Below, piece after piece: positions 1-40,983 of a stretch of DNA of 64,000 bases. A program made the translations under genes and the position numbers. The DNA comes from Octopus bimaculoides (lineage: Eukaryota), in NCBI RefSeq assembly GCF_001194135.2, contig NC_069008.1:17124829-17188828 (forward strand), given 5' to 3'. Position 1 is the stretch's first letter. Every line of letters starts with the position of its first letter. The notes beneath the pieces were generated by a model. That model saw nothing but the letters and a program-made list of their open reading frames with translations, did no database searches and was not told where the DNA came from.

Positions 1-257
1 CCTCCGACGAGGTCTTGGCTGGGGCCTCCGACGAGGTCTTGGCTGGGGCCTCCGACGAGGTCTTGGCTGGGGCTTCCGACGAGGTCTTGGCTGGGGCTTC
101 CGACGAAGTCTTGGCTGGGGCCTCTGACGAGGTCTTGGCTGGGGCCTCCGACGAGGTCTTAGTTGGGACTTTCAACGAGGACTTAGCTGGGGCCTCTGAT
201 GAGGATTTGGCTGGTGACTTTGACAAAGAACTTGCTTGGGCTTCTGATGAAGGCTTT
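1..257 (-). repeat. Coding 24-nt tandem repeat encoding (EAPAKTSS)n
   Basis: Plus-strand unit ggctggggcctccgacgaggtctt. Six near-perfect units, a partial unit at the edge, and four degenerate units toward 257. Confidence 0.95.
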
Positions 258-2824
258 TGATTTGGCTCCGATAATTCTTTCTTTGATAATGAAGAGGATT
301 TGGGCAGAGACTCCTCCAATGCAGATTTAGTGTGGGCCTGTAGCGAAGGTTTACTCTGCGACCCAGATGAGATCTTGGATGCACTTTCAGTTGGTTTAAT
401 GATGGATTTCTCTGAAGGATTGCTTTCTTTAATTAATGTTGTGGTCAGCTTTGTCAGTGTTTTCTCCTGCATGGAACCAGCCCCTGCTAGAACACTCTCT
501 CTTGAAGCCAACTTCGAAGGTTCTTCCTTAGATTTCGATGATATTTCTCCCGCCGTGGATTTCTCTGCAACAGATTTCTTGGTGCCAATGCCATCATCAA
601 GACCAGCTGCATCATCAGCAGTTTTTGAAGAGACAGATGCTGGACTGGATTCCTTTAACTCTGTCTTTGATACATCTTTGGTTGATTCCTTACTTTTCAC
701 AGACAAAGGAGTCTTAGAACTTTCCGATACAACATTGGTCTTCTCTAATTTCTTCTCTCCATCTTCAGCAGACACAGATTTCTTTGTCACAGATTCACTT
801 TTAGAAGATTCTTTCTTCTTATCGGACGACAGTTTTTCCCCTCTGACGGACGATGACTCACCAGAAAAAGGTTTCACACTGGTTCCTTCTTTTGAACTTC
901 CACGTCTCTGTTCTTCAGATCCATCGTTCTTCTTTTCGGATGCCTTACAGAAACCCTTTGAACTGTCATTCTTATCCAAAATTCCTTCAGCCTTGCTCTC
1001 AGAAGGTTTATCAGAACTGGGTTTCAAACTGCTACCCAATTTGGAACCGCCAGAATCTTTCAACTTCTGGGGCTCGGATGAGATTTTCTTCACATCATTT
1101 TGGTCATTCTTGGCCTTGTCTACAACTTTAGGGTCAGACGTTACTTTCGACTTCAGATCCTCTTCAGTAGACTTAACTCCCTGTGGTCCTTCTTCTTTTG
1201 TTACACCTGTCCCCGTTCCAGGCAGTTTAGAAGCCACCTCATCCTCTGCCGTACCCACCCCACCAACAGAATCCCTTGGTTTCTCTGTTTTCAGAGACCC
1301 GACTTTAGTAGTTTCTGTATCGAGTTTAGATTCCGAGGACAAATTCTTCTTCTTGTCCACAGAATCTGTCTGGACGTCCGATATCTTGTTGCTTTCTTTC
1401 TCTGGTTCTGATTTCTCAGTCACGGTTGACTGACTGCTTGCTGAAGAGTCGTTCCCAGACTTTGAGGCATCCGCTTTCGGGATGGAAACTTTCAAACCAT
1501 CGCCAGAAGATTTGGAATCAGCCGACTTTGAAATCTTATCAGGAACAGATTTCAAAACTGCATTATCTGACGACTTCCCTGTATCCTCTTTAAGGGGTTG
1601 CTTGGGAGTTTTTGGTCCTTGTTTTAGATGTGGAGTCTTTGTGCTATCATCACATGGCTTGCTCAAAGATTTTTTCTCCTTATCTTCAGATTGGCTCTCA
1701 ACAGACTTGGACTCCACAGTAACTGTTGATGCCTTCAAAGATGGTTTAACAGTGCCAGAAGAATTTTCTACCTTGCTCTTGGAGTCTGGAATATTCTCTG
1801 CAGGCTTAGTCTTCAAAGTTGTGCTCTTCTGCTCGGGTTCGGTTTTCTGCAGACTTTTCTTCCCACTGTCATCAGCTAGAAGTTCTTTGGATGGTTCCGG
1901 TGCCTCAGAGCAATCTGCTTCACTCTTACTCGACGCACCAGCCTCAGGTTCAGCTTTCTTCTTATCCGGAACAATCTTTTCGTCCTCGTCCTTCTTTCCT
2001 TTACGACCGACAGACAGGTCGACGTCACCGCCGCCACCGCCTCCTCGTGCTGCTCTCAACTTCTCGCAGACTTCCTGCAGCTTCTCAGCAGACTTGGACT
2101 TCCGTCCTTCAACTTCTGGCCACTTCTTAACTCTATCGGTTTTCCCAGAATCTGATTCTCCGGCAGCCATCTTTGTGTCTTTCGTCACCGCCTCCGTCGT
2201 CTCCCCTTTCTCTTGTGGTTCCACCTTCGATGACAAAGGATTCTCTGCTGTCCCTCCTGTAACCTTAACCTCACCTTTCTTCTCCTCCTTCTCACCAATT
2301 CTGACAGATTCCTTTGTCAAATCAGCAGTAGTGTCATCACCGTCATTCTTGTCGTCAAACAAAGGACTTTTAATGCCTTGCTTTGAACGAGCGTCCATTC
2401 CTTGGTCAGTTATCGGTCTTTTAGCTTCTTTGGTATCACTTCCAGACTTCAGGCCAGCTGTAGCCTCACTCTTTGCATTTTCAGTTTGTTGTGGACAGTG
2501 CTTCTTAGTGACCGGATCCAGGTTTGTGGAACTCTTGTGCTTCTCCTCGCTCAACTCTGTGTCTGTTTCGGAATGGTTTCTCTTCCTGGTCTGCGACGGC
2601 AGGGTGGTCTCAGAAGCAGCAGTGTCACAGCTACTCTTGGACTCTTCAGCAAGCTTATCAGCTCTCACATGTCCAGCAGGTTTGTGGTCAGACTCAGGGG
2701 CTGTGCTGTCGTGCAGTTTGACAGAATCGACGGAATCCTCTTTGTCAAACTGTGTCTTTGACGGCTCCGATGTATTGGTGTTATCGTCATCTTGGGGTAT
2801 TGTGTCCTTTGTTGACGCTGGACT
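1..2824 (-). CDS. Very large exon, at least 941 codons of Lys/Glu/Ser/Asp-rich disordered sequence, truncated by window edge
   Basis: Poly-T plus cctccag| acceptor, phase 0 (SPASTKDTIPQDDDN...). Frame checked at 2824-2400, ~1490-260 and 1-260 with no stop. It is absent from the ORF track, consistent with no stop before position 1. Confidence 0.9.
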
Positions 2825-5312
2825 CTGGAGGAAAAAAAAAAAAAAAANNNNNNNNNNNNNNNNNNNNNNNNNNNNNNNNNNNNNNNNNNNNNNNNNNNNN
2901 NNNNNNNNNNNNNNNNNNNNNNNNNNNNNNNNNNNNNNNNNNNNNNNNNNNNNNNNNNNNNNNNNNNNNNNNNNNNNNNNNNNNNNNNNNNNNNNNNNNN
3001 NNNNNNNNNNNNNNNNNNNNNNNNNNNNNNNNNNNNNNNNAAAAAACCCTATTTTATTTTTACAATCAAATATTATTAGGAATTGTATAAAAAGACAATT
3101 GTTAAAAAATTCTGTATTGTGTGTGTAGTCTTTTATTTGTTTGTTTCAGTCACTTGACAGCGGCCATGCTGGAGCACCGCCTTTAGTCGAGCAAATCGAC
3201 CCCAGGACTTATTCTTTGTAAGCCTAGTACTCATTCTATCAGTCTCTTTTGCCGAACCGCTAAGTTACGGGGATGTAAACACACCAGCATCGGTTGTCAA
3301 GCGATGTTGGAGGGACAAACACAGACACACAAACATACGCGCACACACATATATGAAGGGCTTCTTTCAGTTTCCATCTGCCAAATCCACTCACAAGGCT
3401 TTGGTCGGCCTGAGGCTATTGTAGAAGACACTTGCCCAAGGTGCCATGCAGTGGGACTGAACCCGGAACCATGTGGTTGGTAAGCAAGCTACTTACCACA
3501 CAGCCACTCCTGTGCTCAACCAATTTATTGCAGATAAATTTTAACAAGAAAATTTTAAATGGACCCTAGACAAGAACCATTGGGTTAGAAGAACATTATT
3601 GAGGCCCCTTTTTACAGTTCGATGCCCTTCATCCTGCTAACCCTTCCTTGATTTTCAAGTAAGATTCTCTAAGGTCCTTCCAGTTGACTGGATCAACCAA
3701 ACAGCCTGCTCATGAAATTAACTTGCAAGTGGTCGAGTACTCCACAGACACATGTACCCTTAACATGGTTCTGAGGGAGATTCAGTGTGACACAGAAGTT
3801 GACAAAGCTGGCCCGTTTTGAATTACAGATACAACTCATTTTTGACAGCTGAGTGGACTGGGGCAACGTGAAATAAAGTGTCTTGCTCAAGGACACAATG
3901 ACTTTTCCAGGAATCGAACTCATGACCTTGTGATCGTGAACTAAACGCCCGTAACCACTAAGCCAGGAACCTTCTCAATGTGCAACATATAACAAAAGCG
4001 AGGAATGCAGAACTTACCTCAGGTCTCTTCTTCTCCAAAGCCGAGACACTGCAGCTGTCGTCCGAAAACCCTTCAGGAGGGTTGTCAGAGGATGACACCC
4101 GAGACTTGCCATCCTGGTTGTCCTCGACAAAGAAATCCTCCTCTTCCTCCTCCTCTTCTTCTTCTTCCAACTCCTCCTCCTCCTCCTCCTCCTCGTCTTC
4201 CTCTTCTAAATCCTCCTCTTCCTCTTCCTCCTCCTCCTCCTCCCTGGTCGTAGCTGGCACGGTGAGGTTGCTGTCAGACCCAGTCCCTGCGGTGCTGCCA
4301 ATGCTGCAGCTGGCCGCACCGCCGGTGGCGTCATCGGAGCTGCCAGTGGTGGCCGCCCCGTCGATCTCCACATCGATGTCGGACGAGGTGAACACCGGTT
4401 CAAATGGCTCCTTCAGCATTTTAACAACTTCGGTCTTGTGGCCACGCAGCTTGTTCTTCAGTCGATGGATGCCCTCCAGTTGGAAGTGGAGGTCACGCTG
4501 ATCGGGCAGTGTTGGGAAATTGAAAATCAACTTAATCCAACCGGCGAGGTCGGCATAGCTCATGGTCGGATGCCTTTTCTTATAATAGAGCAATTCAAGG
4601 GCCAGAGCCTTCGACAGCTGCGACGCTGGCACATTTGGGCTCTCGCCCTTCTGTAACAGTTCAACGGTGATGCCCAGCTTGTCGCAGAGGGGGCCGAGAT
4701 TTTTCTGCGGCTCCAAGAATGTCTCCTTTATCCAATCGACACCACCTCGTTTCAACCTGCGCCGTATTCGAGACAAGAAGTTAGAGATGTTTTCGGGAGG
4801 ATCTAAGAAGAGATTCTCAAATATTCTTGGCAAGATCTTAACAAAAGTGTAGTCCTCACACGAGTAGATGTAGTCGGTGATGGCAAACCAAAAGCCGTAC
4901 GTGGCACAGTCTTTCTGAAGTTTCTCCCATTCTTCGGCTGTCCATTCCTCTATTCAAAAGACACAAATAGACACTTTGTTAGTTATATATAAAAACAGAT
5001 ACACAAATACATGTATACACACACACATGCATGCATATATATATATATATACACACACATGTATAAACCTCCTTGTCTCACTGTCTGTTTCTTTTAGTTA
5101 GTGTCCACCACCCTACCCTGTCTCTATCCTCTGTCCCATATCTTGTGTCCACCCCCCTCCGTCTGTCCATGTGTCCTAGCTTCTCTCTCCTATCTGCTCC
5201 CAGTTTTCATCTTCCTCCCTGTGTCCATCCATTTGTCCATCTCTCTGTCTCTAACGTAACACCGTCTGTTTCTTCTTGCCAATTGTTGAGAGAGAGAGAG
5301 AGAGAGAGCGAG

Positions 5313-5356
<44 letters not shown>

Positions 5357-5419
5357 NNNNNNNNNNNNNNNNNNNNNNNNNNNNNNNNNNNNNNNNNNNN
5401 NNNNNNNNNNNNNNNNNNN

Positions 5420-5456
<37 letters not shown>

Positions 5457-6722
5457 AATCAAATAAATCCAAGAACTTATAAGAAATGATGAAGACGTCA
5501 AGATGTTAAGTTGTAAAGGAGTGATATTGTGAGGCTGTGACAATGCTTAGAGGTAAAGTTATGGAGATATAAAGTTGGTGATAACGTGATGCTGTGAAGA
5601 GGTGATGCTGTGAAGATGTGGACGTCTTGAAGACATGACACTGTTTAGATGTAATGTCTTGAAGACGTGAGGGCCGGCAAGAGGAGAGGGCCATGAAGAG
5701 AAGACGAGAGGGTTGTGAAGACAAGGGGGTGGTGAAGATGAGATGTTGTAAAGATATTAAGATGTTAAATTACGAAAATCTGATGATGTTCAAATGAGGA
5801 GTTAAGAGAGTGTGAAGATACAAAGGCAAGAATATATAAAACTGTTAAAATGGGAAGAGGAGAAGATGTGAAGTTTTGAAAACATGGTAAGGTGTAAAAG
5901 GCAAAGTTGTAAAGTAAAGGTGTGAAGATACCAAAATGTATCAAGATGAAAGCAGCAGAGACAAGCTGAAATTGAACCGCTCACCAGCAATGTCTCGGTT
6001 GATTAGTTTCTCAATGTTTTCAGCCTCCAATTCGAATTCTTCACAGCAGACTTTTCTCCAGTTTGAAAACTCTGCATCAACGTCACTTTCAGCTGCAGCT
6101 TCTGTAGGAGTCTGCAAGGGATACGGAAGAGAAGAGAAGGGATCAGATAGGGACAGCAACAACAACAAAAGCATGTGCTTAGTGGAAACATATGTAGCAA
6201 TGTTAAAGGATTTATGAATTTTCCATTCAAATATTCTCGCTATTGCTATATTTGTCCTACGCTATAGCCTAAAATAGGTTCAAATAGAAATCTTGATTCA
6301 TAAATATTCAAATTAAAATCCAGAAAATGGAGTAGTAACGTTAATAATAAAAATTTATTAACTGCAAAAATTCAACATATTCACTTACAGATGTTTCAAT
6401 TTTGCTCAAAGAATTAAATTCCACTCAGTAAAACATATCTCGTCAGAGGAGTAAAAAAGATATATCGTTAGGTTATTACATGTTATTCTTCCAAAACATC
6501 TCAACATCTTCAGTCTGTTGAGAGATGTTTTGGAAGAATAACATATAATAAGCTAATAATGCGTCTTTTTCACTCCTCTGATGAGATTTTGCCCAATGAA
6601 ATGTTTTAATTACTGGAATTTAATTCTTTGGGCAAAATTGAAACAGCTGTAAGTGAACATGTTGAATTTTTGCAATTAATAAATTATATTAATGCTACAT
6701 CTCCATTTTCTGGATTTTCATT

Positions 6723-32831: not shown

Positions 32832-34383
32832 AAGAGAGAGAGAGAGAGAGAGAAAAGAAAAAAGAGAGAGACTTACAATTTGATTCTTCATCCACGTCGT
32901 CTACTTCGACCCAGTCCACGTCTGGCTTCTGTGTGTAACAAGTCTTCTTGATGCAGTATACCATGTGATTAGCTGAGGAGCACCGCAGCAGAGGAGAAGG
33001 AGGAGGAACAAAAAGGAAACATCAATGAACAAGGCATGAACACCGCCACCCACACGTACGTACGGCACAACACAGCATTTACATACGGCTTTCACACCGA
33101 CTTTACCTTGAACGGACAACATGGAGAGGAGAGAGAGAAACATCATTGCGAAGTCTCTTCTGTACTTGAATAATCAGGACAGAGACGGAGCACCAATAGT
33201 GTCACTCCAACCTGCCAGAAATAGCAACCAAATCTCCCTCAAATTACATCCAAAATTCTAGTTAAATTCCCTCAAACAGCTAGATTTCTGTTATAAGCCT
33301 TAAGTTACATGGAGCCATTATTTCCATTCATATTATATCTTCTCAGAATATATATATAATAATATTAGGGACAAAATCCAAAATTACAGGTAAAAACTCA
33401 TTTAAAATCAATTTATAAAAAATTAAAATCAAATTGAGCTTTATAGATTATAATATATATAAAAATATATAGTTTTAGGGANNNNNNNNNNNNNNNNNNN
33501 NNNNNNNNNNNNNNNNNNNNNNNNNNNNNNNNNNNNNNNNNNNNNNNNNNNNNNNNNNNNNNNNNNNNNNNNNNNNNNNNNNNNNNNNNNNNNNNNNNNN
33601 NNNNNNNNNNNNNNNNNNNNNNNNNNNNNNNNNNNNNNNNNNNNNNNNNNNNNNNNNNNNNNNNNNNNNNNNNNNNNNNNNNNNNNNNNNNNNNNNNNNN
33701 NNNNNNNNNNNNNNNNNNNNNNNNNNNNNNNNNNNNNNNNNNNNNNNNNNNNNNNNNNNNNNNNNNNNNNNNNNNNNNNNNNNNNNNNNNNNNNNNNNNN
33801 NNNNNNNNNNNNNNNNNNNNNNNNNNNNNNNNNNNNNNNNNNNNNNNNNNNNNNNNNNNNNNNNNNNNNNNNNNNNNNNNNNNNNNNNNNNNNNNNNNNN
33901 NNNNNNNNNNNNNNNNNNNNNNNNNNNNNNNNNNNNNNNNNNNNNNNNNNNNNNNNNNNNNNNNNNNNNNNNNNNNNNNNNNNNNNNNNNNNNNNNNNNN
34001 NNNNNNNNNNNNNNNNNNNNNNNNNNNNNNNNNNNNNNNNNNNNNNNNNNNNNNNNNNNNNNNNNNNNNNNNNNNNNNNNNNNNNNNNNNNNNNNNNNNN
34101 NNNNNNNNNNNNNNNNNNNNNNNNNNNNNNNNNNNNNNNNNNNNNNNNNNNNNNNNNNNNNNNNNNNNNNNNNNNNNNNNNNNNNNNNNNNNNNNNNNNN
34201 NNNNNNNNNNNNNNNNNNNNNNNNNNNNNNNNNNACTTTAAGAAGAACGTTAGTGGTTGGTCGGAGCATAGGCATATAGACGAGTGTGTGTGTGTGTGTG
34301 TGTGTGTGCATGACTTTTGTATGTGAGTAAATGAATGAGTTAGTCATTTGTGTGTATACATGGCTGTGCAAACATGCATGTGC

Positions 34384-34422
<39 letters not shown>

Positions 34423-37400
34423 TGTGCACACACACAAGCACACGCACTTATATGTACATCGTGCTGGAGTAAGAGAAATGGAATCAGTACAGTGATGTAG
34501 AAATATCTAGAAAAATGAACAGAGTTTGTGATGATGGTGACGATGATGATGGATGGATGCTGTGGTGGTGGTGGTGGTGGTGGTAGTAATATCGGATGAG
34601 ACAAGAGACAAGAAGAGAACAGTGAAAGAGATGAAATGAGACAAGACATACAATGTGAAATCAGATGACAAAATGATGACGATGACGACGATGACAAGCG
34701 ATGATTACAAAGTCCCTTACCGGAAGTGTCCGGCAGTGTTCATGTTGGCTTTGCATTCGATACATTTATAAGTCTCCATGTATTCGGGTAGCTTCATTCC
34801 ATGGTAGTCCATAACTTTGGTGAGTGCAGGGGCATTCAATGACTTCACCCCTTTGTCTTTAGACGGGGCCACACCCGGCTCCGGTACTTTTATCATCACT
34901 TGGTCAGGGGTCGTGTATTTGGCATTCATACCTGCAGAGACACAGACAGACAGTATAGAGATATAGATTTCGATTTCAAATTTTGGCACAAAGCCAGCGT
35001 TTTCGAAGAGAGGGGGTAAGTTGATTACATCAATCCCAGTATGCAACTGGTACTTATTTTATCGACCCTTAAAGGATGAACGGCAAAGTCAACCTCAGCA
35101 GAATTTGAACTCAGAACATAAAGACAGACACAATGCCATTACGCATGTTGATGACGATGATGATGATGACAATGACAATGATGATGGTGACGATGACGAC
35201 GATGGTGTTGATGAGGGTGATGATGACAACAACAATGATGATGGTGATGATGACGAGGTGATGAAGATGAGATGACAATGATGACGGTGGTGTTGACAAC
35301 GGTGATGATGGAGATAACAATGGAGATGATGTTGGTAATGATGACAACAACAACAATGATGATGGAGATAATGATGATGATGATGACAACAACAATGATG
35401 ATGATGGTGACAATAAGATGACAGTATAAAAGAAAGATGAAGGCAAACAAAAACGAATGAACGAAAGAGTAGGCTAGGGTCACTCACCTATGACTCCCTT
35501 TTGGTTCGACTGGTGGTCCTTCTTGCGGTGAGCCTTCACTTCCAAAGAATTGAAGAATGTCAGCTTACATATGGGACATTTTCGAGAATTCGTCTTGGAC
35601 TGATGTTTCAGGAGGTGGTGATAGTACATTTGGGTCTGACCCCAGCCATTGGCCACGAATTTAACACGGAATATCTTCAAACAGTACAGACACAGGATGA
35701 ATGGAGAACTGTCATGTTTCTGAAATGCAAACATGACCATCGGTCAGAGAAATACAGGGAGAAACGAACAGATGACCGGAGGGTCTGAGAAGCTAAGACT
35801 TGTTGTTTTAACAAACAGCCAGAAGTTTAAAAAAAACAAACCAGACATTGTCCTAACAGCAAGATGACTATGAGGTCAGATCGGCTAACAGACATGTTTT
35901 AACAAATAGTCAGATGGGCAGGAGGTTTGGGCCTCAAGGAGGCAATGTGGCCAGTGCCGGTGTCGTGTAACTAACACCCATGCTGGTGGCATATAAAAAG
36001 CATCTATTGAGCACTGGGCCTCACAGAGGCAATGGCAAATGACCGAAACCTTTGGAATACGCCGTGCTTGAGAAGAAGATCCATCAGGTCAAGTGAATCA
36101 TAGTCGTGGTAGATACTGGCGTAAAAAAATGAAAGTTCAACCCCCACCTGCTGAAAAAACCAAAACATAAAAAAAAGAAAAAAAAAAGAACTTACCTTCT
36201 TGAAGTGGTCGACTGCGTCACTGTACATGGATGAGCGGAAATTGCACATTTGACAAATATATGGCATCTCGCACGCTGTGTGCACTTGGCGCATGTGATT
36301 GGTTAACGCAAGTCGACTGTCATGGTCCTTCTCGCAGATGCGACACAGGAGCACGTTGGCATTGTTCATATGGACCTGGTCAGAGCAGAGAGAGAGAGAG
36401 AGAGAGAGAGAGGAGACAGGTTAATGACTATTGTTTGACCAAATGCAGTGCTGCAGCATGGCCACAGTGAAACAAATAAAAGGACAGAGAGTGCTTACCT
36501 TCTCAATGTGAGTTTGCATTTCAAAAGGAGTATCAAACTGTTTGTAGCAATGTTTACACTGGGTGAGGTCGCTGAGGTCAAGATTCTGTTGTTTCTCGCT
36601 GTCAATATGACCCTGCATGTGCATCATGGTGCGCACGTTATTGTACAACATCTTGGAACAATACCAACACTGCAATACAACAAGAACAACAAATTAGAAG
36701 AGAACAAAGCGATAGCCATGGAGATAGAAAAGAGTGCAGTGGGTGCTTTGCGTTTCTGACATGGTGCTAGCCCCAGCGAGGTTTGCTTTGGCAGGTTTTC
36801 TGTAGCTAGATGCCCTTCCTAATGCCAACGAGCACTTTACAGAGAGGACCGAGCACCTACCACATGGCACCGGTGTGACAAAGGTCCCTCAAGTGAGAGG
36901 AGGTGTGCTACTGAATGAGGGCGGGGGGCTTTGTGACAGGTGATGAGAGATTAAAGCAGCGGGTGGGAAACGCCCACCTGCAGGCACAATTGCACCTGCA
37001 AACCCATTTTATTGCGCCTGCAGGATGGTATACTCATATGAACAAAATATAGTAAATTTTCCAATTATAAAATTTATGTGATACTTCGGCAGACTTTTAA
37101 CTCAGAAAGTTAACCTGGGCAAAACGCCATTATGCATTTTGCCCCCTATATTAAAGATTCTACTCCCTTAAGAATAAAAAAAAAGGGGGAGCTTACCTTA
37201 AATCTGTGTTCTCCTTTCTCTTCCCAATAATTTGGGTCACCTTCCATTTTGCCATAATAATATTCATCCAGTGGGACCCAGTTTCCTGAAAGAAGGTAAA
37301 AAAACACAAAATAAAAATGAAGTCCCCCAAAAACAGGGGCACAGGTTCAATCCTCAGATGTGATGCACACACGGCATTTTAACCCTTAGTATTTAAAGTG

Positions 37401-40400
37401 GCCAGATCCAGCTTATCACACTTACCCTACAGTGTCATTCTAAAAACAAACAATCCCATCATTGAAATCTCAAAGCCATGAGATAATCCAGGATTAATTG
37501 TAAACAATGTGAATAAATAAGCATTACAATTTGGTGTAGTAATCTGAATGCTAAAGGGTTAAAATAGGGACCACGTGAACCAATGAGGGGGCTTCTATGT
37601 AGTCATTTGGCCTTACACAATGTAACAGCCAAATCTCCCCTCAACAAACTCCCTACTCTCTTTAACCGTTTAACATGTAAACCAGCCATATCCAGGGACC
37701 AAATATTCTGCTTGTTATATGTTCAAACTGGCCAGATCCAGCCTCTCACACTTATCCTACAATGTCATTCTAAAAATAAACAATCACATCATCAAAATTT
37801 CAAAGCTATGAAATAATGAATGAGTAATTAAAACAACATGTTGACAGAGTAATCATCATCATCATCATCATCGTCTAACGTCCATCTTCCATGCATCCAT
37901 GGATAGGACGGTTGACAGGAGCCAGCCAGGCATGATGACCAATGACAACAAAACCAGAACATAATTCACCCACCCCCCACCCCTTCCTGAACAACTACTG
38001 CCCCCTGTTGACCAAAAGAGAAGAAACTGACCGGCAGAGGAATCTGTTGAAGTTTTTCGCTGCACCTTCTTTTTGGGTGGGGACTGGGCCGAATCTGTGT
38101 CTGCTGCCCGTTTCAGTGTTGTCGAGGCAGTGTCCAAGGGATCGGTTTTCTTGAAGCCATAGCCGATGGTGTTGGCACTGGTGGTCCCTTGGTCACTTTG
38201 GCCGAGGCTGCTGTTGTTGTTGTTGTTGCTGCTGTTTCCACTTCCAACTTGTCTGTGATTGGCAGCGGAGAGCAAAGAAGAGATAGCCTTTGGTAAAATC
38301 AGGGAGTGTTGCTGCGACAGGGAACTGTTTTCCCCTGTGGGAGAGAAAAAAGGTCAGAGGTTAGAGGAGACAACGGAGGGGGGTGGGGCGAAAGGTCGAG
38401 TGAGTGGTCAGAGGCTGGAAAAAGCGAGGTGAAATGGTCAAGTGATGATAAGGTTAGCAGTCAAAGGAAAAGAGAGAGGTCAAGTAAACAAGTGAGATGA
38501 GGTCAGAGGTTAGGTTAGAGCGGTGGTCAAATGGACAGAGATAAACAAACTAGAAAGACAAACAGACAGCTAGCTAGATAGACTGACAGACACCTAGACA
38601 GACAAATAAGACTGACAAACAGACAGACAGACAGACAAAACAGGAAGATTAGACAGAAGGAGAATGTTAAACGAAGAAAAAAATTTTTTAATGAAGGCAA
38701 AGCATTAATAAAAAACATGAAGCATAAACTTACCAGGTTTCCGCATTTGTCCCTGGACTTTTCCGAGAGACATGTTTCCCGCAAGATTTTTATTGAGGGT
38801 GTTGGCAGTGAGCATGGAGTTTGAAAGAGAAGAGCGCTGTAATTGGTTAGCATGAAGTTGGGACTGGAGGAAAAAAGAAAGAGAACAGTAATTTTAAGAT
38901 AAACTCACAAAATGACGGGATACGAAGGGATTCAGAAGTTCAGTTAACATTCAACTCTTTAGCATTCGGATTACTCTGTCAAACACAGTAATTATTTGGA
39001 ATTAAACATGAATTATCTTCCAGCTGCATCTTCTTGTGTGTGTGTGTGTGTGTGTGTGTATACACACGCGACAGGCTTCTTTCAGTGTCTGTCTATGAAA
39101 TCCGCTCACAAGGCTTTGGTTGGCCTGAGGCCATAGTAAAGGATACTTGCCCAAGGTTCCACACAGGGAGACTGAACCCCGAACTATGTGGTTGGGAAGC
39201 AAGCTTCTTACCACAGAGCCACAAAAGTGAAAAGCACACACACACACACACAAACACATTTTCACTTATACACACACGATTCACACTTACACACACACAC
39301 ACAAAAAAAACAAACAAACACACAAACATATAGACACACTTACCTTCAGAAGCTGTGTCGAACCCATTCTAGATTGCTGAACCTGGTTTGGAATTCGGGT
39401 CGCTGGCGTCTCACCAACAATGATCACATCAGGGGATTTACTCCTAGGAAGGGCTGAAAGATAATAACATAAACAGTTACCCTCAGGGCAGGCTTCTGGG
39501 TGGTGAGTAGTTTGCACACCCCGGAGGCTCGATATTGCAATGTTCCACGGTCAACAATGGAGTGTGCCACGCAGTTTTAAAACTATCTATCCATGCGTGA
39601 ACATGTTGGAAAGTAGGTTAACAATTTGATTGCACACAGCTACACAATCAATCTTTTCACACCTACCTGGCCAAGACATATCCAGGTTCTAAGAGAGACA
39701 AAAAACTTCCTGTTTAAAAGTGATCTAAATTAAAGCCTCCACCCACAAGATTAATAATGACAAAGTTATTTTAATAAATTCGCCATTATTGTCAAAATTA
39801 ATTGCAAGAAAGAGAAAGTATTTCAACAGAAATATGATAAGTCATCATCATCATCATTCAACATCTGTTTTCCATGCTGGCATGGGTTGGACAGTTTGAT
39901 AGGAGCTGACCAGCTGAAGGGCTATCCAGGCCCCATGTTGGTGTGGTTTCTATGGCTGGATGCCCTTCCTAATGCCAACTACTTTACAGAGTGGCACTGG
40001 GTTCTTGTACGCAGCATCGACACGGGTGGTTGTTACGTGGGACCAGCCCCTACAAGCCTGCAAGACTAGGGATGCTCAGCTGGAGAGGGTTGCAGGGGAC
40101 AAGCCCGTATGCGAGGGCAACCATGCTTTTTTTTACTAGCTTGACATGTCAAAGGATTTCAACAGAAAAAGGGTAACAAAAGGGTTAAAGGGATCTAATT
40201 TAAAACCCTCCATTAAAATGTTAAATTTATGTTCCAAACGCCCAGATTAATAATTAACAAAATTATTTTAATAAACTCTTCATTATTTTCAAAATTAATT
40301 AAAACAGCAGTGGATTTCAACAGAAATATGGTAACAAAAGGGTTAAATAACTTTATCTTTACCAAGAGGATTAACCTGGTGTTAACACTTTTGACACCGA

Positions 40401-40983
40401 TCCACATGAGACCACCACTCCTGGTATTAATATAGTAATTTCCTCAGCCATTTACACAGGCTGTTCCAGTGATCTGATGAACTAGAACCCTCGTCATCAT
40501 AAACTGACAGCGTACCAGTTATACATACAGTTACCACCCATGACAGGCAGCAAGGGTATCCCAGGGGTGGATATTACAGCACCCCAGGGTAGACAACAGA
40601 CAAAACCAAAGCACAGAGACAGACTAAATAGAGCACCAGATGAACAGAGAATAAAGCAACCTTTCTGGTAGACAGTGACCTCATTAGAGGTTTTGTTATT
40701 TGGCTAAAAATAGAAATTAACTTAGAAAAGGGTGGGAACAGGGTGGAGAGGGAGAAACTGTCAACTTACAAGCTGGGGTAGTAACAGACGATGCTTTCTG
40801 TTGTATCATTTGACGGGCTTTTGCAGCTTTGATACGTTGGACTGCTTTCTCGTAGTCATCCAGGGCCCGACGGGAAGCCTCGATTTGCCACGGAGACAAA
40901 TCGTCCTCTTCACATTCCATCATGAGCTCCAGGGAGCTCTGGTTCGATCGCCGAAGCGAGTATGGTCCTTTTATCTTCGCCAT
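1..40983 (-). CDS. POGZ: Spliced gene model: POGZ/ZNF280-family zinc-finger protein, at least ~1930 aa, 3' end outside window; link between the zinc-finger half and the C-terminal half is inferred
   Basis: Hand-assembled exons with canonical GT/AG and compatible phases: 40770-40983, 39344-39453, 38734-38863, 38032-38334, 37197-37285, 36499-36669, 36196-36375, 35488-35719, 34721-34931, [gap exon], 32877-32972, 6869-7038, 5985-6111, 4018-4949, 1-2824. The family call comes from recalled similarity to human POGZ/ZNF280 motifs (MECEEEELEPWQ, DFYYG, CQHCYRQFSTPF, EMPYVCQVCQYRSS, AYANHM). Orthology to POGZ versus ZNF280 or fly row is not resolved. Confidence 0.8.
3140..3512 (-). mobile_element. tRNA-derived SINE, family A, near full length
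   Basis: Reverse-complement head ggagtggctgtgtggtaagtagcttgc..ggttccgggttcagtccc (A/B-box-like), internal CA/TA microsatellite, 3' part ..gctccagcatggcc. Related copies at ~8140, 14410, 22280, 24690, 28150, 28770, 39070, 44025, 44580, 47850, 48300, 49000, 51200, 51720, 54615, 58590, 58985, 59720, 61215, 63628. Confidence 0.85.
4018..4949 (-). CDS. Coding exon (932 nt): ~180 aa helical globular segment, then S/G/T linker, poly-Glu tract and acidic tail ending EKKRPE
   Basis: cttttgaatag| acceptor, GAG|gtaagt donor, phase 1 to 0. Extends ORF 3958..4833 upstream by 38 codons (EWTAEEWEKLQKDCATYGFWFAITDYIYSCEDYTFVKI). Confidence 0.9.
5985..6111 (-). CDS. Coding exon: TPTEAAAESDVDAEFSNWRKVCCEEFELEAENIEKLINRDIA
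   Basis: cccttgcag| acceptor, G|gtgagc donor, 127 nt, phase 0 to 1. Confidence 0.85.
6310..6723. repeat. Long imperfect inverted repeat (foldback/MITE-like), ~200 bp arms with ~9 nt loop
   Basis: Arms pair throughout: aaattaaaatccagaaaatggag with ctccattttctggattttcattt; ttcaattttgctcaaagaattaaattcc with ggaatttaattctttgggcaaaattgaa; atgttattcttccaaaacatctc with gagatgttttggaagaataacat. Confidence 0.95.
6869..7038 (-). CDS. Coding exon: AAPAKSIDSDTKPSTQKLEEDSNSSAATNESAGPKDSDQSQNAQKQEVPKDTLSTQ (disordered)
   Basis: ctgtctttccag| acceptor, CAG|gtatgt donor, 170 nt, phase 1 to 0. The coding frame differs from the ORF-track frame. Confidence 0.8.
7552..7818. mobile_element. hAT-type MITE, 267 bp
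   Basis: Perfect 12-bp TIR cagggctgtgga/tccacagccctg, exact 8-bp TSD aatctaga (7544-7551 and 7819-7826), internal ggagtc subterminal repeats. Confidence 0.95.
7820..8090. mobile_element. Fragment of a second MITE family (ggacccc-rich, hAT/Charlie-like)
   Basis: Internal sequence shared with 3041-3125, 3545-3610 and 32205-32430. Related hAT-type ends at 11020 (cagtggttcccaaac), 42995 (cagtggtgggcaaac) and 56293/56852. Confidence 0.55.
8463..8618 (+). pseudogene. Tc1/mariner-superfamily transposase C-terminal remnant
   Basis: Translates NTQQLKEAVSAAFATITKAQLRKISQRTW-CHENDGAHTDLLD, resembling the post-catalytic C-terminus of Tc1/mariner transposases (recall). Short, with an apparent internal deletion. 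Confidence 0.55.
16151..16495 (+). mobile_element. tRNA-derived SINE with conserved central ttgagcaagacacttta box
   Basis: A box tggctcagtgg 16157-16167 and B box gagttcgattcc 16200-16211. The same head and box occur, with a different body, on the minus strand at 3700-3965 and 20140-20420. Confidence 0.75.
16495..17150. repeat. Degenerate tandem array (~6 units of ~100 bp) of the same family as 57843-58180
   Basis: Recurrent gtg.gat.tgaggga.atttg.ctg.tattt.ta..aagtctagcta..atgtagagg motif. Confidence 0.8.
20430..20870. repeat. Degenerate purine-rich minisatellite (~30-40 bp period)
   Basis: Recurrent acaattaat..g and aggaca motifs; also at 20035-20110. Confidence 0.7.
21270..21650 (+). pseudogene. 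RTE-clade LINE, decayed C-terminal part of reverse-transcriptase ORF
   Basis: Translation with stops and one frameshift: ARLFNSTILSALL*..KHKFCWARHVTRFTDKRWTCAVAE*YPRDQNRPLGRP..WKDD, the typical RTE pattern LFxxxILPxLLY..WAGHVxR..RW...WxP..xRxxGRP..W. Confidence 0.85.
21742..22057. mobile_element. pogo/Tigger-type MITE
   Basis: TA-flanked with degenerate TIRs: cagtgaaaccttggtttacaaat at the left end versus reverse complement tagtgatgaacttcagttttcaaat at the right end. Confidence 0.6.
23901..24428 (+). mobile_element. Helitron/Helentron-like non-autonomous element (HINE-like)
   Basis: 5' caagggcactcagagagcgcaaacctctgc, 3' hairpin atctctgcc-ttcgct-gaggcggagat, no TSD relative to the adjacent empty-site duplicate. 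Confidence 0.65.
32444..32668 (+). mobile_element. SINE family C (tRNA-like head; central cctttcatcc..ggggtc.ataaattaagtacc, resembling the Meta-domain by recall)
   Basis: B-box-like gagttcaaattc and short tandem tail (aagaaat)n. Other copies at 8735-8960, 9000-9220, 35000-35130, 41615-41880, 45630-45990, 54752-54978. Confidence 0.75.
32877..32972 (-). CDS. POGZ: Coding exon: (x)NHMVYCIKKTCYTQKPDVDWVEVDDVDEESN
   Basis: Polypyrimidine tract plus ctcctcag| acceptor, T|gtaagt donor, 96 nt, phase 1 to 1. xNHM matches the AYANHM end of the last POGZ finger. Phase requires one intervening exon after 34721. Confidence 0.7.
33482..34234. other. Assembly gap predicted to contain a coding exon
   Basis: Phase mismatch between exon 34721 (phase 2) and exon 32972 (phase 1), and the first half of the last finger is missing. 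Confidence 0.7.
34721..34931 (-). CDS. POGZ: Coding exon 9: linker plus atypical finger YKCIECKANMNTAGHF
   Basis: gtctctgcag| acceptor, CG|gtaagg donor, 211 nt, phase 1 to 2. CxxC..HF corresponds to the recalled CxEC..NHF segment of POGZ. Confidence 0.9.
35488..35719 (-). CDS. POGZ: Coding exon 8: fingers CLYCLKIF..HHLLKH and CPICKLTFFNSLEVKAHRKKDH
   Basis: catttcag| acceptor, G|gtgagt donor, 232 nt, phase 0 to 1. Confidence 0.95.
36196..36375 (-). CDS. POGZ: Coding exon 7: C2H2 fingers CRICEKDHDSRLALTNHMRQVH and EMPYICQMCNFRSSMYSDAVDHFKK
   Basis: gaccag| acceptor, AAG|gtaagt donor, 180 nt, phase 0 to 0. EMPYxCQxCxxRSS is characteristic of POGZ/ZNF280. Confidence 0.95.
36499..36669 (-). CDS. 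POGZ: Coding exon 6: C2H2 fingers CWYC..HMQGH and CKHCYKQFDTPFEMQTHIEK
   Basis: ttgcag| acceptor, AAG|gtaagc donor, 171 nt, phase 0 to 0. Close match to the recalled POGZ finger sequence. Confidence 0.95.
37197..37285 (-). CDS. POGZ: Coding exon 5: (G)NWVPLDEYYYGKMEGDPNYWEEKGEHRFK
   Basis: ctttcag| acceptor, AAG|gtaagc donor, 89 nt, phase 1 to 0. DEYYYG matches the DFYYG motif that precedes the finger cluster in POGZ/ZNF280. Confidence 0.9.
37383..37558. mobile_element. piggyBac-type MITE
   Basis: TTAA on both sides (37379-82 and 37559-62) and TIR cccttagtatt versus aatgctaaaggg. Related copies at 12650-12820, 13900-14120, 28660-28770, 37666-37840, 51530-51656, 61720-61908. Confidence 0.8.
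38032..38334 (-). CDS. POGZ: Coding exon 4: low-complexity S/N/T-rich segment containing candidate NLS SPPKKKVQRK
   Basis: tctctcccacag| acceptor, G|gtcagt donor, 303 nt, phase 1 to 1. In frame with ORF 37868..38275. Confidence 0.85.
38734..38863 (-). CDS. POGZ: Coding exon 3: SQLHANQLQRSSLSNSMLTANTLNKNLAGNMSLGKVQGQMRKP
   Basis: ttttcctccag| acceptor, G|gtaagt donor, 130 nt, phase 0 to 1, open frame. Not listed in the ORF track in this frame. Confidence 0.85.
39344..39453 (-). CDS. POGZ: Coding exon 2: (S)LPRSKSPDVIIVGETPATRIPNQVQQSRMGSTQLLK
   Basis: ctttcag| acceptor, AAG|gtaagt donor, 110 nt, phase 1 to 0, fits both neighbours. DVIIVGE resembles the hydrophobic-acidic motif near the N-terminus of ZNF280 proteins. 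Confidence 0.85.
40770..40983 (-). CDS. POGZ: First coding exon: MAKIKGPYSLRRSNQSSLELMMECEEDDLSPWQIEASRRALDDYEKAVQRIKAAKARQMIQQKASSVTTPA
   Basis: Acceptor tcttcctcag|ATAATGG (exon starts 40986; A at -3, G at +4). Donor T|gtaagt, phase 1. MECEEDDLSPWQ matches the N-terminal motif of POGZ/ZNF280. Confidence 0.9.

What the first reader, a model, noticed from the sequence alone, without database searches (positions are those of the whole stretch)
4400..4949. Unexplained ~180 aa helical globular domain, possibly captured from a different DNA transposon
Seen: between disordered regions lies an amphipathic, W/F/Y-rich segment (EEWEKLQKDCATYGFWFAITDYIY..LSKALALELLYYKKRHPTMSYADLAGWIKLIFNFPTLPDQRDLHFQLEGIHRLKNKLRGHKTEVVKMLKEPFEP). 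It has two loosely similar halves, each ending in a basic helix and KETFLEP or KEPFEP. I cannot assign it to a named family. Inference from loose recall: the LEL..Y..W..IF..L..KL..EPF.P pattern resembles N-terminal helical regions of uncharacterised marine-invertebrate transposon-associated proteins. If so, this scaffold would have domesticated a transposon-derived module independently of vertebrate POGZ. This is the best novelty candidate in the window.
Basis: inference. Interest (0 to 1): 0.7.

Follow-up and report, generated by a model that had tools for sequence, protein, structure and literature searches.

The report
Transposon-derived domain in cephalopod POGZ-like gene
A conserved, helical, roughly 190-residue domain in an octopus POGZ/ZNF280-like chromatin gene was taken, intron included, from the front end of the transposase of a DNA transposon family still found in mussels and ribbon worms, a capture separate from the pogo capture that made vertebrate POGZ.

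Summary
Window 4949-4393 (minus strand) is the first part of a spliced exon (4949-4018). It encodes an all-helical domain with no Pfam or PDB match.

The host gene is a POGZ/ZNF280-like zinc-finger gene. Only the cephalopod copies (octopus, cuttlefish) carry the domain. No other homologue recovered does, including about 33 from other lophotrochozoans.

The other homologues (23-29% identity) are N-terminal domains of long transposon proteins from Mytilus, the nemertean Lineus and unidentified eukaryotic contigs. Two of these lineages sit in 7.5-8 kb elements with perfect 12-13 bp terminal inverted repeats (TAGRG...). Four insertions each have a different 7-bp target-site duplication.

Three Mytilus transposon lineages and the octopus gene share a phase-1 intron at the same codon, just before (D/E)(D/E)W. 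The capture was therefore a two-exon, frame-neutral cassette (6111-5985 plus 4949-4018) taken as DNA.

Between two octopods the domain has dN/dS 0.026.

Residues 114-157 match pogo/CENP-B_N-like helix-turn-helix repeats (hhalign 96%). A domesticated transposase DNA-binding module is the best reading, but binding is untested.

The "two similar halves" claim is not supported.

Verdict: a real, new host-transposase fusion, independent of vertebrate POGZ.

The parts
4393..4949 (-). Main coding part of the captured module: about 185 codons of helical domain, from EEWTAEEW to KEPFEPV. It forms the 5' part of exon 4949-4018.
   Evidence: Splice acceptor and reading frame. Homology to Sepia P0002 residues 869-1054 and to transposon proteins. 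AF2 pLDDT 78. dN/dS 0.026.
5985..6111 (-). Upstream exon of the captured cassette (TPTEAAAESDVDAEFSNWRKVCCEEFELEAENIEKLINRDIA, plus the first base of the next codon). The acceptor is AG 6113-6112 and the donor is GT 5984-5983.
   Evidence: Sequence. 75.6% identical to Sepia P0002 residues 826-870. Aligns with the exon that precedes the shared intron in the transposon genes (W..L..nI..LLIN). Same donor position and phase as in the transposon genes.
4950..5984 (-). Phase-1 intron that splits the first acidic codon of (D/E)(D/E)W. The position and phase are the same as the intron in three divergent Mytilus transposon lineages.
   Evidence: Octopus: GCT G|GTGAGC ... AATAG|AG GAA TGG. L002: ACC G|GTTAGT ... 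TTTTAG|AT GAT TGG. L007: GCC G|GTTAGT ... TTTTAG|AT GAT TGG. L008: ACC G|GTTAGT ... TTGCAG|AT GAT TGG.
4483..4614 (-). Helix-turn-helix-like core (domain residues 114-157, SKALALELLYYKKRHPTMSYADLAGWIKLIFNFPTLPDQRDLHF).
   Evidence: hhalign against five HTH repeats of the Mortierella pogo-like protein P0005: probability 96.3%, E 2e-9. With transposon members only: 63.8%, E 6.7e-5. phmmer hit to P0005 at E 1.1e-5 in 1.84e9 proteins. P0005 has Pfam HTH_Tnp_Tc5 directly after its first repeat. AF2 helices 115-127, 133-144 and 152-168 have pLDDT about 90.
4018..4392 (-). Acidic, low-complexity remainder of the same exon, including a poly-E stretch encoded by the (TCC)n repeat at 4136-4243. It ends at donor GAG|GTAAGT. 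No homology to transposon proteins.
   Evidence: dN/dS 0.128 with indels against the second octopod. The transposon homology stops at about KEPFEP.
32875..40983 (-). Host-gene exons upstream: N-terminal region and C2H2/zf-POGZ zinc-finger array. Exons at 40983-40774, 39445-39350, 38869-38738, 38311-38021, 37289-37194, about 36672-36496, about 36318-36196, 35722-35486, 34932-34720 and 32973-32875. The internal boundaries in 36672-36196 are approximate.
   Evidence: tblastn of Sepia P0002: zinc-finger exons are 87-92% identical. P0002 has Pfam zf-POGZ at E 1.9e-14.
2..3145 (-). Long S/K/E-rich disordered stretch that probably continues the gene. This is inferred: the acceptor was not located, and an N gap lies at 2848-3040. 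The frame runs off the window.
   Evidence: Stop-free frame of 1048 codons. Orthologues in other lophotrochozoans have long acidic, serine-rich C-terminal tails. A 24-nt tandem repeat lies at 1-214.

Best explanation
The segment is a domesticated piece of a DNA transposon. An ancestor of coleoid cephalopods had a cut-and-paste element inserted in the long intron of its POGZ/ZNF280-like zinc-finger gene. The element belonged to a so far unclassified family with hAT-like ends: TIRs starting 5'-TAGRG, 7-bp target-site duplications, and a transposase of about 1,280 residues.

Two exons from the 5' part of the transposase gene, together with the intron between them, became spliced into the host mRNA. 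They form a frame-neutral internal cassette of 127 + 932 nt (353 codons). It sits between the zinc-finger array and the disordered C-terminal tail. The rest of the element (coiled coil, catalytic core, TIRs) was lost.

The retained module is the helical N-terminal domain of the transposase. It contains a helix-turn-helix of the pogo/CENP-B_N-like kind. It most likely binds DNA, originally the transposon's own ends, and now gives the scaffold an extra sequence-specific anchoring module.

Shown: homology, the transposon context of the relatives, the shared intron, restriction to cephalopods among the homologues recovered, and purifying selection.
Inferred: DNA binding, the target sequences, inclusion of the cassette in the mature mRNA of this species, and the link to the downstream giant exon.
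For: Homology:
- Exhaustive phmmer gave 9 hits. Seven are proteins with the domain at or near their N-terminus, E 5e-8 to 4e-4.
- The alignment is collinear over about 190 residues, with conserved DDW, FW, NIS.F.RKIR, GPLC..GI..WL, LEL and W motifs.

Transposon context:
- Mytilus coruscus L001 and L002 share a 7,967-bp unit at 96.9% identity with unrelated flanks. It has a perfect TIR (TAGAGATGCCAG/CTGGCATCTCTA) and 7-bp duplications TTAGTGT and GCGTTGT.
- A second lineage (L006/L003) has TIR TAGGGAGTTCAGT/ACTGAACTCCCTA and duplications CTCAAGG and CCTATGC.
- The domain maps inside these elements.
- L006 carries an intact 1,279-residue ORF. L003 is a decayed copy with a nested reverse-transcriptase insertion.

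Shared intron:
- Same codon and same phase in L002, L007, L008 and the window.

Lineage restriction:
- The domain HMM hits only Sepia P0002, the second octopod's fragment P0001 and the transposon proteins among the 56 proteins collected. The best POGZ-family hit outside cephalopods has E 0.18.
- The host gene belongs to the POGZ/ZNF280 family.

Direction of transfer:
- Transposon lineages differ from each other as much (17-58% identity) as from the cephalopod domain (23-29%).

Constraint:
- dN/dS 0.026, no indels, and 73-74% amino-acid identity between octopus and cuttlefish.

HTH:
- hhalign 96.3% against the Mortierella repeats.
- The transposon domains are basic, pI 8.5-9.8.
- No other transposon remnant lies in the window.
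Against: - No transcript data were available. Inclusion of the cassette rests on consensus splice sites, frame neutrality, the lack of a start codon before most of the domain, and the Sepia gene model.
- DNA binding is untested.
- Pfam HTH models do not hit the domain, and Foldseek finds no significant fold match.
- The HTH similarity drops to 64% probability when the cephalopod sequences are left out.
- The octopus domain is less basic (pI 5.9) than the transposon versions. That could mean a shift to protein binding.
- The transposase has no Pfam or PDB match. Its superfamily and catalytic motifs were read by eye only.
- Nautilus and other cephalopods could not be examined.
Confidence: 0.85

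Rival explanations
1. The module is transposon-derived and domesticated, but it works as a protein-protein interaction or oligomerisation domain rather than as a DNA binder. In the transposase it would help assemble the transpososome. In the host protein it would recruit a partner or drive self-association.
For: - No significant structural or Pfam match to any DNA-binding fold.
- The octopus version is near-neutral to acidic (pI 5.9), whereas the transposon versions have pI 8.5-9.8.
- The first about 100 residues show no HTH similarity.
- The host protein already has a large zinc-finger array.
Against: - Residues 114-157 match HTH repeats that sit directly upstream of a Tc5-type HTH in a pogo-like fungal protein.
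- No zinc-finger or other DNA-binding Pfam domain was seen in the transposase apart from this N-terminal domain. From general knowledge, DDE transposases bind DNA through their N-terminal part.
Confidence: 0.25
2. Reverse direction. The domain is an old host domain, and the transposons picked up host exons by transduplication. The transposon context would then be secondary.
For: DNA transposons can capture host gene fragments (general knowledge). A shared intron is also what one would expect if genomic host DNA were captured.
Against: - The domain is the in-frame N-terminus of the single long transposase ORF, not a passenger fragment.
- It occurs in at least four deeply divergent transposon lineages across two phyla.
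- Among host genes it is found only in cephalopod POGZ-like genes and is missing from all other homologues recovered.
Confidence: 0.04
3. The exon is not part of the POGZ-like mRNA. It is a decaying transposon fragment, or a separate nested gene, inside the gene's 27-kb intron, and gene predictors joined it to the host gene by mistake.
For: - No RNA evidence was available.
- The Sepia model P0002 is a computational prediction and ends shortly after the domain.
- About 26.7 kb separates exon 32973-32875 from exon 6111-5985.
Against: - dN/dS of 0.026 with no indels, and 73-74% identity across the octopus-cuttlefish split, rule out decay.
- The exons have consensus splice sites, together keep the frame, and offer no start codon before most of the domain.
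- The same arrangement was predicted independently in Sepia.
- A nested independent gene remains possible only with an unseen upstream first exon.
Confidence: 0.07

Closest known systems
Vertebrate POGZ (pogo transposable element derived with ZNF domain)
   Same: The ancestral scaffold is the same: a C2H2 array with the zf-POGZ double finger. The transposon-derived module lies C-terminal to the zinc fingers. Both are cases of transposase capture by a host gene.
   Different: - Vertebrate POGZ captured a whole Passer-type pogo transposase (HTH_Tnp_Tc5 + DDE_1) in vertebrates only (PMC7386202; Pfam on teleost pogzb).
- The cephalopod gene captured only the N-terminal helical domain of an unrelated element with a 7-bp TSD and TAGRG ends. 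Pogo elements make TA duplications (general knowledge).
- It has no catalytic domain.
- The domain HMM does not hit pogzb. hhalign against the pogzb DNA-binding region gives 0.2%, though that test has low power.
Host-transposase fusion genes formed by splicing into transposase exons (for example SETMAR, and the vertebrate set of Cosby et al. 2021; cited from my own knowledge)
   Same: A host gene gains a transposase N-terminal, putative DNA-binding domain by exonisation of a transposon in an intron. The catalytic part is lost and the fusion then evolves under purifying selection.
   Different: - The captured part is an internal, frame-neutral two-exon cassette rather than a C-terminal end.
- The transposon's own intron is retained.
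- The donor family and its domain are absent from Pfam.
- The lineage is cephalopods. PMC10027918, the one paper checked that surveys transposon-derived transcription factors in Octopus, does not mention POGZ.
CENP-B N-terminal / pipsqueak-type helix-turn-helix of pogo-like transposases
   Same: Residues 114-157 align with five tandem HTH repeats of Mortierella protein P0005. The first of those repeats directly precedes a Pfam HTH_Tnp_Tc5 domain. The AF2 model has three helices in the right order and spacing.
   Different: - No Pfam CENP-B_N, HTH_psq or HTH_32 hit on the domain.
- The loop before the third helix is longer (FPTLPDQ).
- The HTH is embedded in a helical domain of about 190 residues whose first half has no known relative.
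hAT superfamily transposons (as the donor element)
   Same: The TIRs start TAGAG or TAGGG, which fits the hAT YARNG rule (general knowledge). The elements are of kilobase size and encode a single long transposase. The transposase shows a C..H motif and a C-terminal SE[KR]DF..LD motif, read by eye. [quoted passage not shown]
   Different: The TSD is 7 bp, not the usual 8 bp. There is no BED finger. Pfam Dimer_Tnp_hAT and other hAT models do not hit the transposase, and neither does any PDB transposase sequence.

Membership tests
Domesticated transposase-derived domain (host-transposase fusion) | Significant sequence homology to a domain encoded by transposons | tested here: met
   phmmer E 5e-8 to 4e-4 against 1.84e9 proteins. 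The alignment is collinear over about 190 residues.
Domesticated transposase-derived domain (host-transposase fusion) | The relatives lie in mobile elements with terminal inverted repeats and target-site duplications, present at several sites | tested here: met
   Two lineages, four insertions. Perfect 12-13 bp TIRs and four different 7-bp duplications.
Domesticated transposase-derived domain (host-transposase fusion) | The host copy is orthologous across species, has lost the transposon ends and catalytic part, and evolves under purifying selection | tested here: met
   Sepia orthologue at 73% identity. No other transposon remnant in the window. dN/dS 0.026. Synteny was not tested.
Domesticated transposase-derived domain (host-transposase fusion) | The module is expressed as part of the host mRNA | not testable with these tools
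   No RNA data. Support is indirect: consensus splice sites, a frame-neutral cassette and the Sepia gene model.
POGZ/ZNF280 zinc-finger family (host gene) | C2H2 array that includes the POGZ-like double zinc finger (Pfam PF25429) | tested here: met
   Sepia orthologue: zf-POGZ E 1.9e-14. Window zinc-finger exons are 87-92% identical to it. Part of the double finger falls in N gap 33482-34234.
Vertebrate POGZ pogo-derived module | HTH_Tnp_Tc5 plus DDE_1 domains of a pogo transposase | tested here: not met
   No Pfam hit at E<=10. The domain HMM does not hit pogzb. hhalign 0.2%. Teleost pogzb does carry these domains.
CENP-B_N / HTH_psq helix-turn-helix | Match to the curated Pfam models | tested here: not met
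   No hit for the window sequence or for any of the 9 family members at E<=10.
CENP-B_N / HTH_psq helix-turn-helix | Profile-level similarity to bona fide pogo-type HTH units, and a three-helix arrangement | tested here: met
   hhalign 96.3%, E 2e-9 against the Mortierella P0005 repeats. Transposon members only: 63.8%. AF2 helices 115-127, 133-144 and 152-168.
CENP-B_N / HTH_psq helix-turn-helix | Sequence-specific DNA binding | not testable with these tools
   Needs EMSA, SELEX or DAP-seq.
SANT/Myb domain (suggested by WTAEEW...GFWFAI) | Match to Myb/SANT profiles, with three regularly spaced aromatic residues | tested here: not met
   No Pfam Myb/SANT hit at E<=10. In the transposon relatives the motif reads DDW...FW, without the SANT pattern.
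hAT superfamily (donor transposon) | 8-bp TSD, YARNG termini, hAT dimerisation domain | tested here: inconclusive
   Termini TAGAG and TAGGG fit. The TSD is 7 bp. No Pfam hAT domain in the intact 1,279-residue protein.

The most novel reading that the evidence does not exclude
The POGZ/ZNF280 zinc-finger scaffold may be a recurrent landing pad for transposase modules across animals:
- pogo in vertebrates;
- an additional piggyBac-type domain in teleost pogzb;
- THAP domains in bivalve, brachiopod and annelid orthologues;
- the N-terminal HTH-bearing domain of an undescribed hAT-like transposon family in coleoid cephalopods.

If so, there is a general selective advantage in coupling this chromatin scaffold to DNA-binding modules that recognise transposon sequences, for example to target heterochromatin to transposon relics. 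The cephalopod domain and its donor element would then also define a new transposase DNA-binding fold and possibly a new transposon clade.
Probability: 0.35. Interest if true: 0.8.

Novelty: new member of a known kind. Interest (0 to 1): 0.64.

Why it matters
- It documents a clean host-transposase fusion in cephalopods, supported by an unusually direct line of evidence: an intron shared with the donor transposon family.
- It shows that the ancestral scaffold behind vertebrate POGZ, a major autism and intellectual-disability gene, captured a different transposon module in a second large-brained lineage.
- It brings to light a protein domain and a DNA-transposon family (TAGRG ends, 7-bp TSD, transposase of about 1,280 residues) that have no match in Pfam or among PDB sequences.
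- It gives a testable hypothesis. The domain should bind DNA related to the donor element's ends. The cephalopod protein's genomic targets could then be compared with those of vertebrate POGZ.

Tried and rejected
- SANT/Myb reading of 'EEWTAEEW...GFWFAI'. No Pfam support, and the transposon relatives lack the pattern.
- My first idea, that the domain is a degenerate remnant of the POGZ pogo DNA-binding domain (HTH_psq + HTH_Tnp_Tc5). Rejected: there are no Tc5 or DDE_1 hits, the relatives sit in non-pogo elements with 7-bp TSDs, and the domain is missing from all non-cephalopod orthologues.
- Internal duplication ('two halves'). hhalign probability 0.3%.
- Single-sequence AF2 model. pLDDT 47.9, unusable.
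- Foldseek of the good model against PDB and BFVD. Nothing below E = 1, only non-significant DnaA domain IV-like rows.
- Profile against PDB sequences. Nothing.
- Word-indexed homology searches with the domain or its alignment. Only 1-3 hits; the exhaustive search was needed.
- Pfam and PDB on the intact transposase P0058 and on the L003 ORF pieces. No transposase family recognised.
- Inverted-repeat scan of L003 alone. It did not reveal the TIRs; they came from comparing copies.
- Look-up of the Sepia locus for P0002. Not on record, so the intron position and dN/dS against Sepia could not be computed.
- Literature. No paper found on this fusion or on POGZ in cephalopods.
Full report
**What is in the sequence**

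The window is a gap-rich, repeat-rich animal genome segment. On the minus strand the frame is open from 4953 to 3961. A polypyrimidine tract and AG at 4951-4950 set the exon start at 4949. GAG|GTAAGT sets its end at 4018.

The exon encodes three things in order:
- an acidic poly-E tract, encoded by a (TCC)n repeat at 4136-4243;
- a short further tail.

Downstream lies a stop-free frame of 1048 codons, rich in S, K and E (3145-2). It is interrupted by an N gap and runs off the window.

**Which gene it belongs to**

An exhaustive HMMER search found a 1,108-residue protein annotated as POGZ in the cuttlefish Acanthosepion pharaonis (P0002). It is 73% identical to the segment over 188 residues, without gaps. 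P0002 has the Pfam zf-POGZ double finger (E 1.9e-14).

Mapping P0002 on the window recovers the gene on the minus strand:
- N-terminal and zinc-finger exons between 40983 and 32875; the zinc-finger exons are 87-92% identical;
- an intron of about 26.7 kb;
- a small exon at 6111-5985;
- the exon at 4949-4018.

**No named family matches**

- Pfam finds nothing at E<=10 for the octopus segment or for any family member.
- PDB sequences give nothing, either with the single sequence or with a profile.
- A single-sequence AlphaFold2 model was unusable (pLDDT 47.9).
- With a 9-sequence alignment the model is confident: mean pLDDT 78.4, about 90 for residues 85-190, ten helices and no strands.
- Foldseek against PDB and BFVD gives no match below E = 1.

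**Relatives**

The exhaustive search returned nine proteins in all. Besides the cuttlefish orthologue it found:
- Seven proteins, 25-32% identical by phmmer (23-29% over the alignment columns), E 5e-8 to 4e-4. All carry the domain at or near their N-terminus.
- A Mortierella protein (P0005) that matches residues 118-170 only.

The seven align collinearly over about 190 residues. Conserved motifs include DDW, FW, NIS.F.RKIR, GPLC..GI..WL, LEL and an invariant W. Their sources are Mytilus coruscus (three divergent lineages), the nemertean Lineus longissimus, and eukaryotic contigs in ENA assemblies. One cluster contains an intact 1,279-residue ORF, P0058. Its order is domain, coiled coil, a large central region, then a C-terminal part.

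**The relatives are transposon proteins**

- Mytilus loci L001 and L002 share a 7,967-bp unit at 96.9% identity, with unrelated flanks.
- The unit begins TAGAGATGCCAG and ends CTGGCATCTCTA. It is flanked by TTAGTGT/TTAGTGT at one site and GCGTTGT/GCGTTGT at the other.
- The domain is encoded inside this unit, at L002 8821-9513.
- A second lineage (L006 4643-12164, holding P0058, and L003) begins TAGGGAGTTCAGT and ends ACTGAACTCCCTA. Its duplications are CTCAAGG and CCTATGC.
- L003 is a decayed copy, with frameshifts and a nested reverse-transcriptase element.

These are cut-and-paste DNA transposons with 7-bp target-site duplications. Pfam and PDB do not recognise the transposase. By eye it shows DGT, TD..VN, C..H and SE[KR]DF..LD motifs. 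The ends fit the hAT YARNG rule, and Repbase lists hAT families with 7-bp TSDs (PMC4455052). I therefore call the elements hAT-like, and that is an inference.

**A shared intron**

In three Mytilus transposon lineages whose domains are only 30-39% identical, the transposase gene has a phase-1 intron inside the first D codon of DDW:
- L002: ACC G|GTTAGT ... TTTTAG|AT GAT TGG
- L007: GCC G|GTTAGT ... TTTTAG|AT GAT TGG
- L008: ACC G|GTTAGT ... TTGCAG|AT GAT TGG

The octopus gene has GCT G|GTGAGC ... AATAG|AG GAA TGG, the same codon and the same phase.

The exons before the intron are also alike. They are 42 and 41 residues long and share a W..L..nI..LLIN pattern.

The host therefore acquired two transposon exons with their intron, as genomic DNA. 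Together the two exons are 127 + 932 = 1,059 nt, or 353 codons, so the cassette keeps the reading frame. No other part of the transposase is detectable in the window.

**Restricted to cephalopods**

A search with P0002 returned 45 POGZ/ZNF280-like proteins. They come from gastropods, bivalves, a chiton, a brachiopod, nemerteans, annelids, Hymenoptera and teleosts.

An HMM of the domain, run with filters off against all 56 proteins collected up to that point, hit only three groups: the Sepia protein, the fragment from the second octopod (P0001), and the transposon proteins. The best hit in any other POGZ-family member had E 0.18.

Transposon lineages are as far from one another (17-58% identity) as they are from the cephalopod domain (23-29%). 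This argues for transfer from transposon to host.

Vertebrate POGZ arose from a Passer-type pogo transposase within vertebrates (PMC7386202). The cephalopod event is therefore independent.

**Selection**

A Logan contig from a second octopod (L004) aligns to window 5058-3746. Identities by region:
- domain, 94.6% with no indels;
- flanking introns, 79-81%;
- acidic tail, 86.9% with indels.

Nei-Gojobori counts for the domain are 27 synonymous and 3 non-synonymous differences over 185 codons (dN/dS 0.026). The tail gives 0.128.

**What the domain does**

- Residues 114-157 align with five tandem HTH units of Mortierella P0005. hhalign gives 96.3%, E 2e-9 with all members, 63.8%, E 6.7e-5 with transposon members only, and nothing for the first half.
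- In P0005 the first unit is followed directly by a Pfam HTH_Tnp_Tc5 domain. That is the arrangement of pogo and CENP-B DNA-binding regions.
- The AF2 model places three confident helices there.
- The transposon versions of the domain are basic, pI 8.5-9.8.
- No other DNA-binding domain was recognised in the transposase.

Together with the general rule that the N-terminal part of a DDE transposase binds the element's ends, this makes a domesticated DNA-binding module the best reading.

It is not proven. Pfam HTH models and Foldseek do not support it. The octopus domain is less basic (pI 5.9). A protein-interaction role remains a live rival.

**What did not hold**

- The 'two similar halves' idea fails a profile-profile test (probability 0.3%).
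- A SANT/Myb reading has no support.
- My own first idea, a degenerate POGZ pogo DNA-binding domain, is contradicted by the source element and by the distribution across species.

**Known or new**

The kind of event is known: a transposase N-terminal domain captured by a host gene through splicing. I found no report of this case, of the domain, or of POGZ in cephalopods in the searchable literature.

I file it as a new member of a known kind. Three points stand out:
- the transposon's own intron is retained;
- the captured part is an internal cassette;
- the capture is convergent with vertebrate POGZ, into the same ancestral scaffold.

Teleost pogzb additionally carries a piggyBac-type domain, and several lophotrochozoan orthologues carry THAP domains. 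Repeated capture by this scaffold is therefore the most novel reading that the evidence still allows.

Noticed in passing
P0050 (teleost pogzb) residues 752-1113; also P0051, P0053-P0056: Teleost pogzb proteins carry a full piggyBac-type transposase domain (Pfam DDE_Tnp_1_7, E 2e-55). It sits between the zinc fingers and the pogo-derived HTH_Tnp_Tc5/DDE_1 part. That would make two different transposases in one host gene, conserved across several fish.
   Followed up: partly
P0026 residues 4-88, P0037 residues 208-292, P0044 residues 10-94: POGZ/ZNF280-like orthologues of Mytilus trossulus, Lingula and Capitella carry a THAP domain, which is a P-element-type DNA-binding domain. Most other lophotrochozoan orthologues do not.
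   Followed up: partly
P0047-P0049 and P0052 (Hymenoptera), about residues 300-640: Hymenopteran relatives have a conserved insertion of about 350 residues upstream of the zinc fingers (…FSATKFAEWLIQQGL…GYVWISSCCPDRF…) with no Pfam match at E<0.001. From memory it resembles IS1595/ISXO2-like transposase regions. This was not tested.
   Followed up: no
L006 6001-9840 (P0058), C-terminal about 120 residues; L002 11971-12405: The transposase ends with a conserved '...VAYEDTWYLGEV...' / '...VVAYMDTWYPGQV...' segment that looks Tudor- or chromo-like. It might target integration to chromatin. Pfam gave no hit.
   Followed up: no
L003 12077-15188 and 17597-18470: The decayed transposon copy carries a nested non-LTR-type element (Pfam RVT_1 + RNase_H, 978-residue ORF on the minus strand) and a second insertion of about 0.9 kb. 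The copy itself lies next to another reverse-transcriptase ORF.
   Followed up: partly
window 1-214: A 24-nt tandem repeat (8.9 copies, 88% matches) lies inside the long disordered coding stretch. On the minus strand it encodes SSEAPAKT repeats.
   Followed up: partly
window 3640-3990; copies at 16148-16288 and 20145-20410: An interspersed repeat with a tRNA-like 'GGTTCGATTCC' core starts about 30 nt downstream of the exon's donor site and recurs elsewhere in the window. Many other short repeats of this kind appear as spurious ORFs throughout the window.
   Followed up: partly
window 32875-6111 and N gap 33482-34234: Two stretches of the Sepia protein have no counterpart in the window. Residues 684-744, the second half of the zf-POGZ double finger, probably fall in the N gap. 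Residues 778-825 may be divergent or hidden in one of the many gaps of the 26.7-kb intron.
   Followed up: no
window 4017-3958: If the donor at 4018 is not used, the frame reads on for 19 codons into the intron and then stops. The Sepia model also ends shortly after the domain. A short isoform ending just after the captured module is therefore possible.
   Followed up: no
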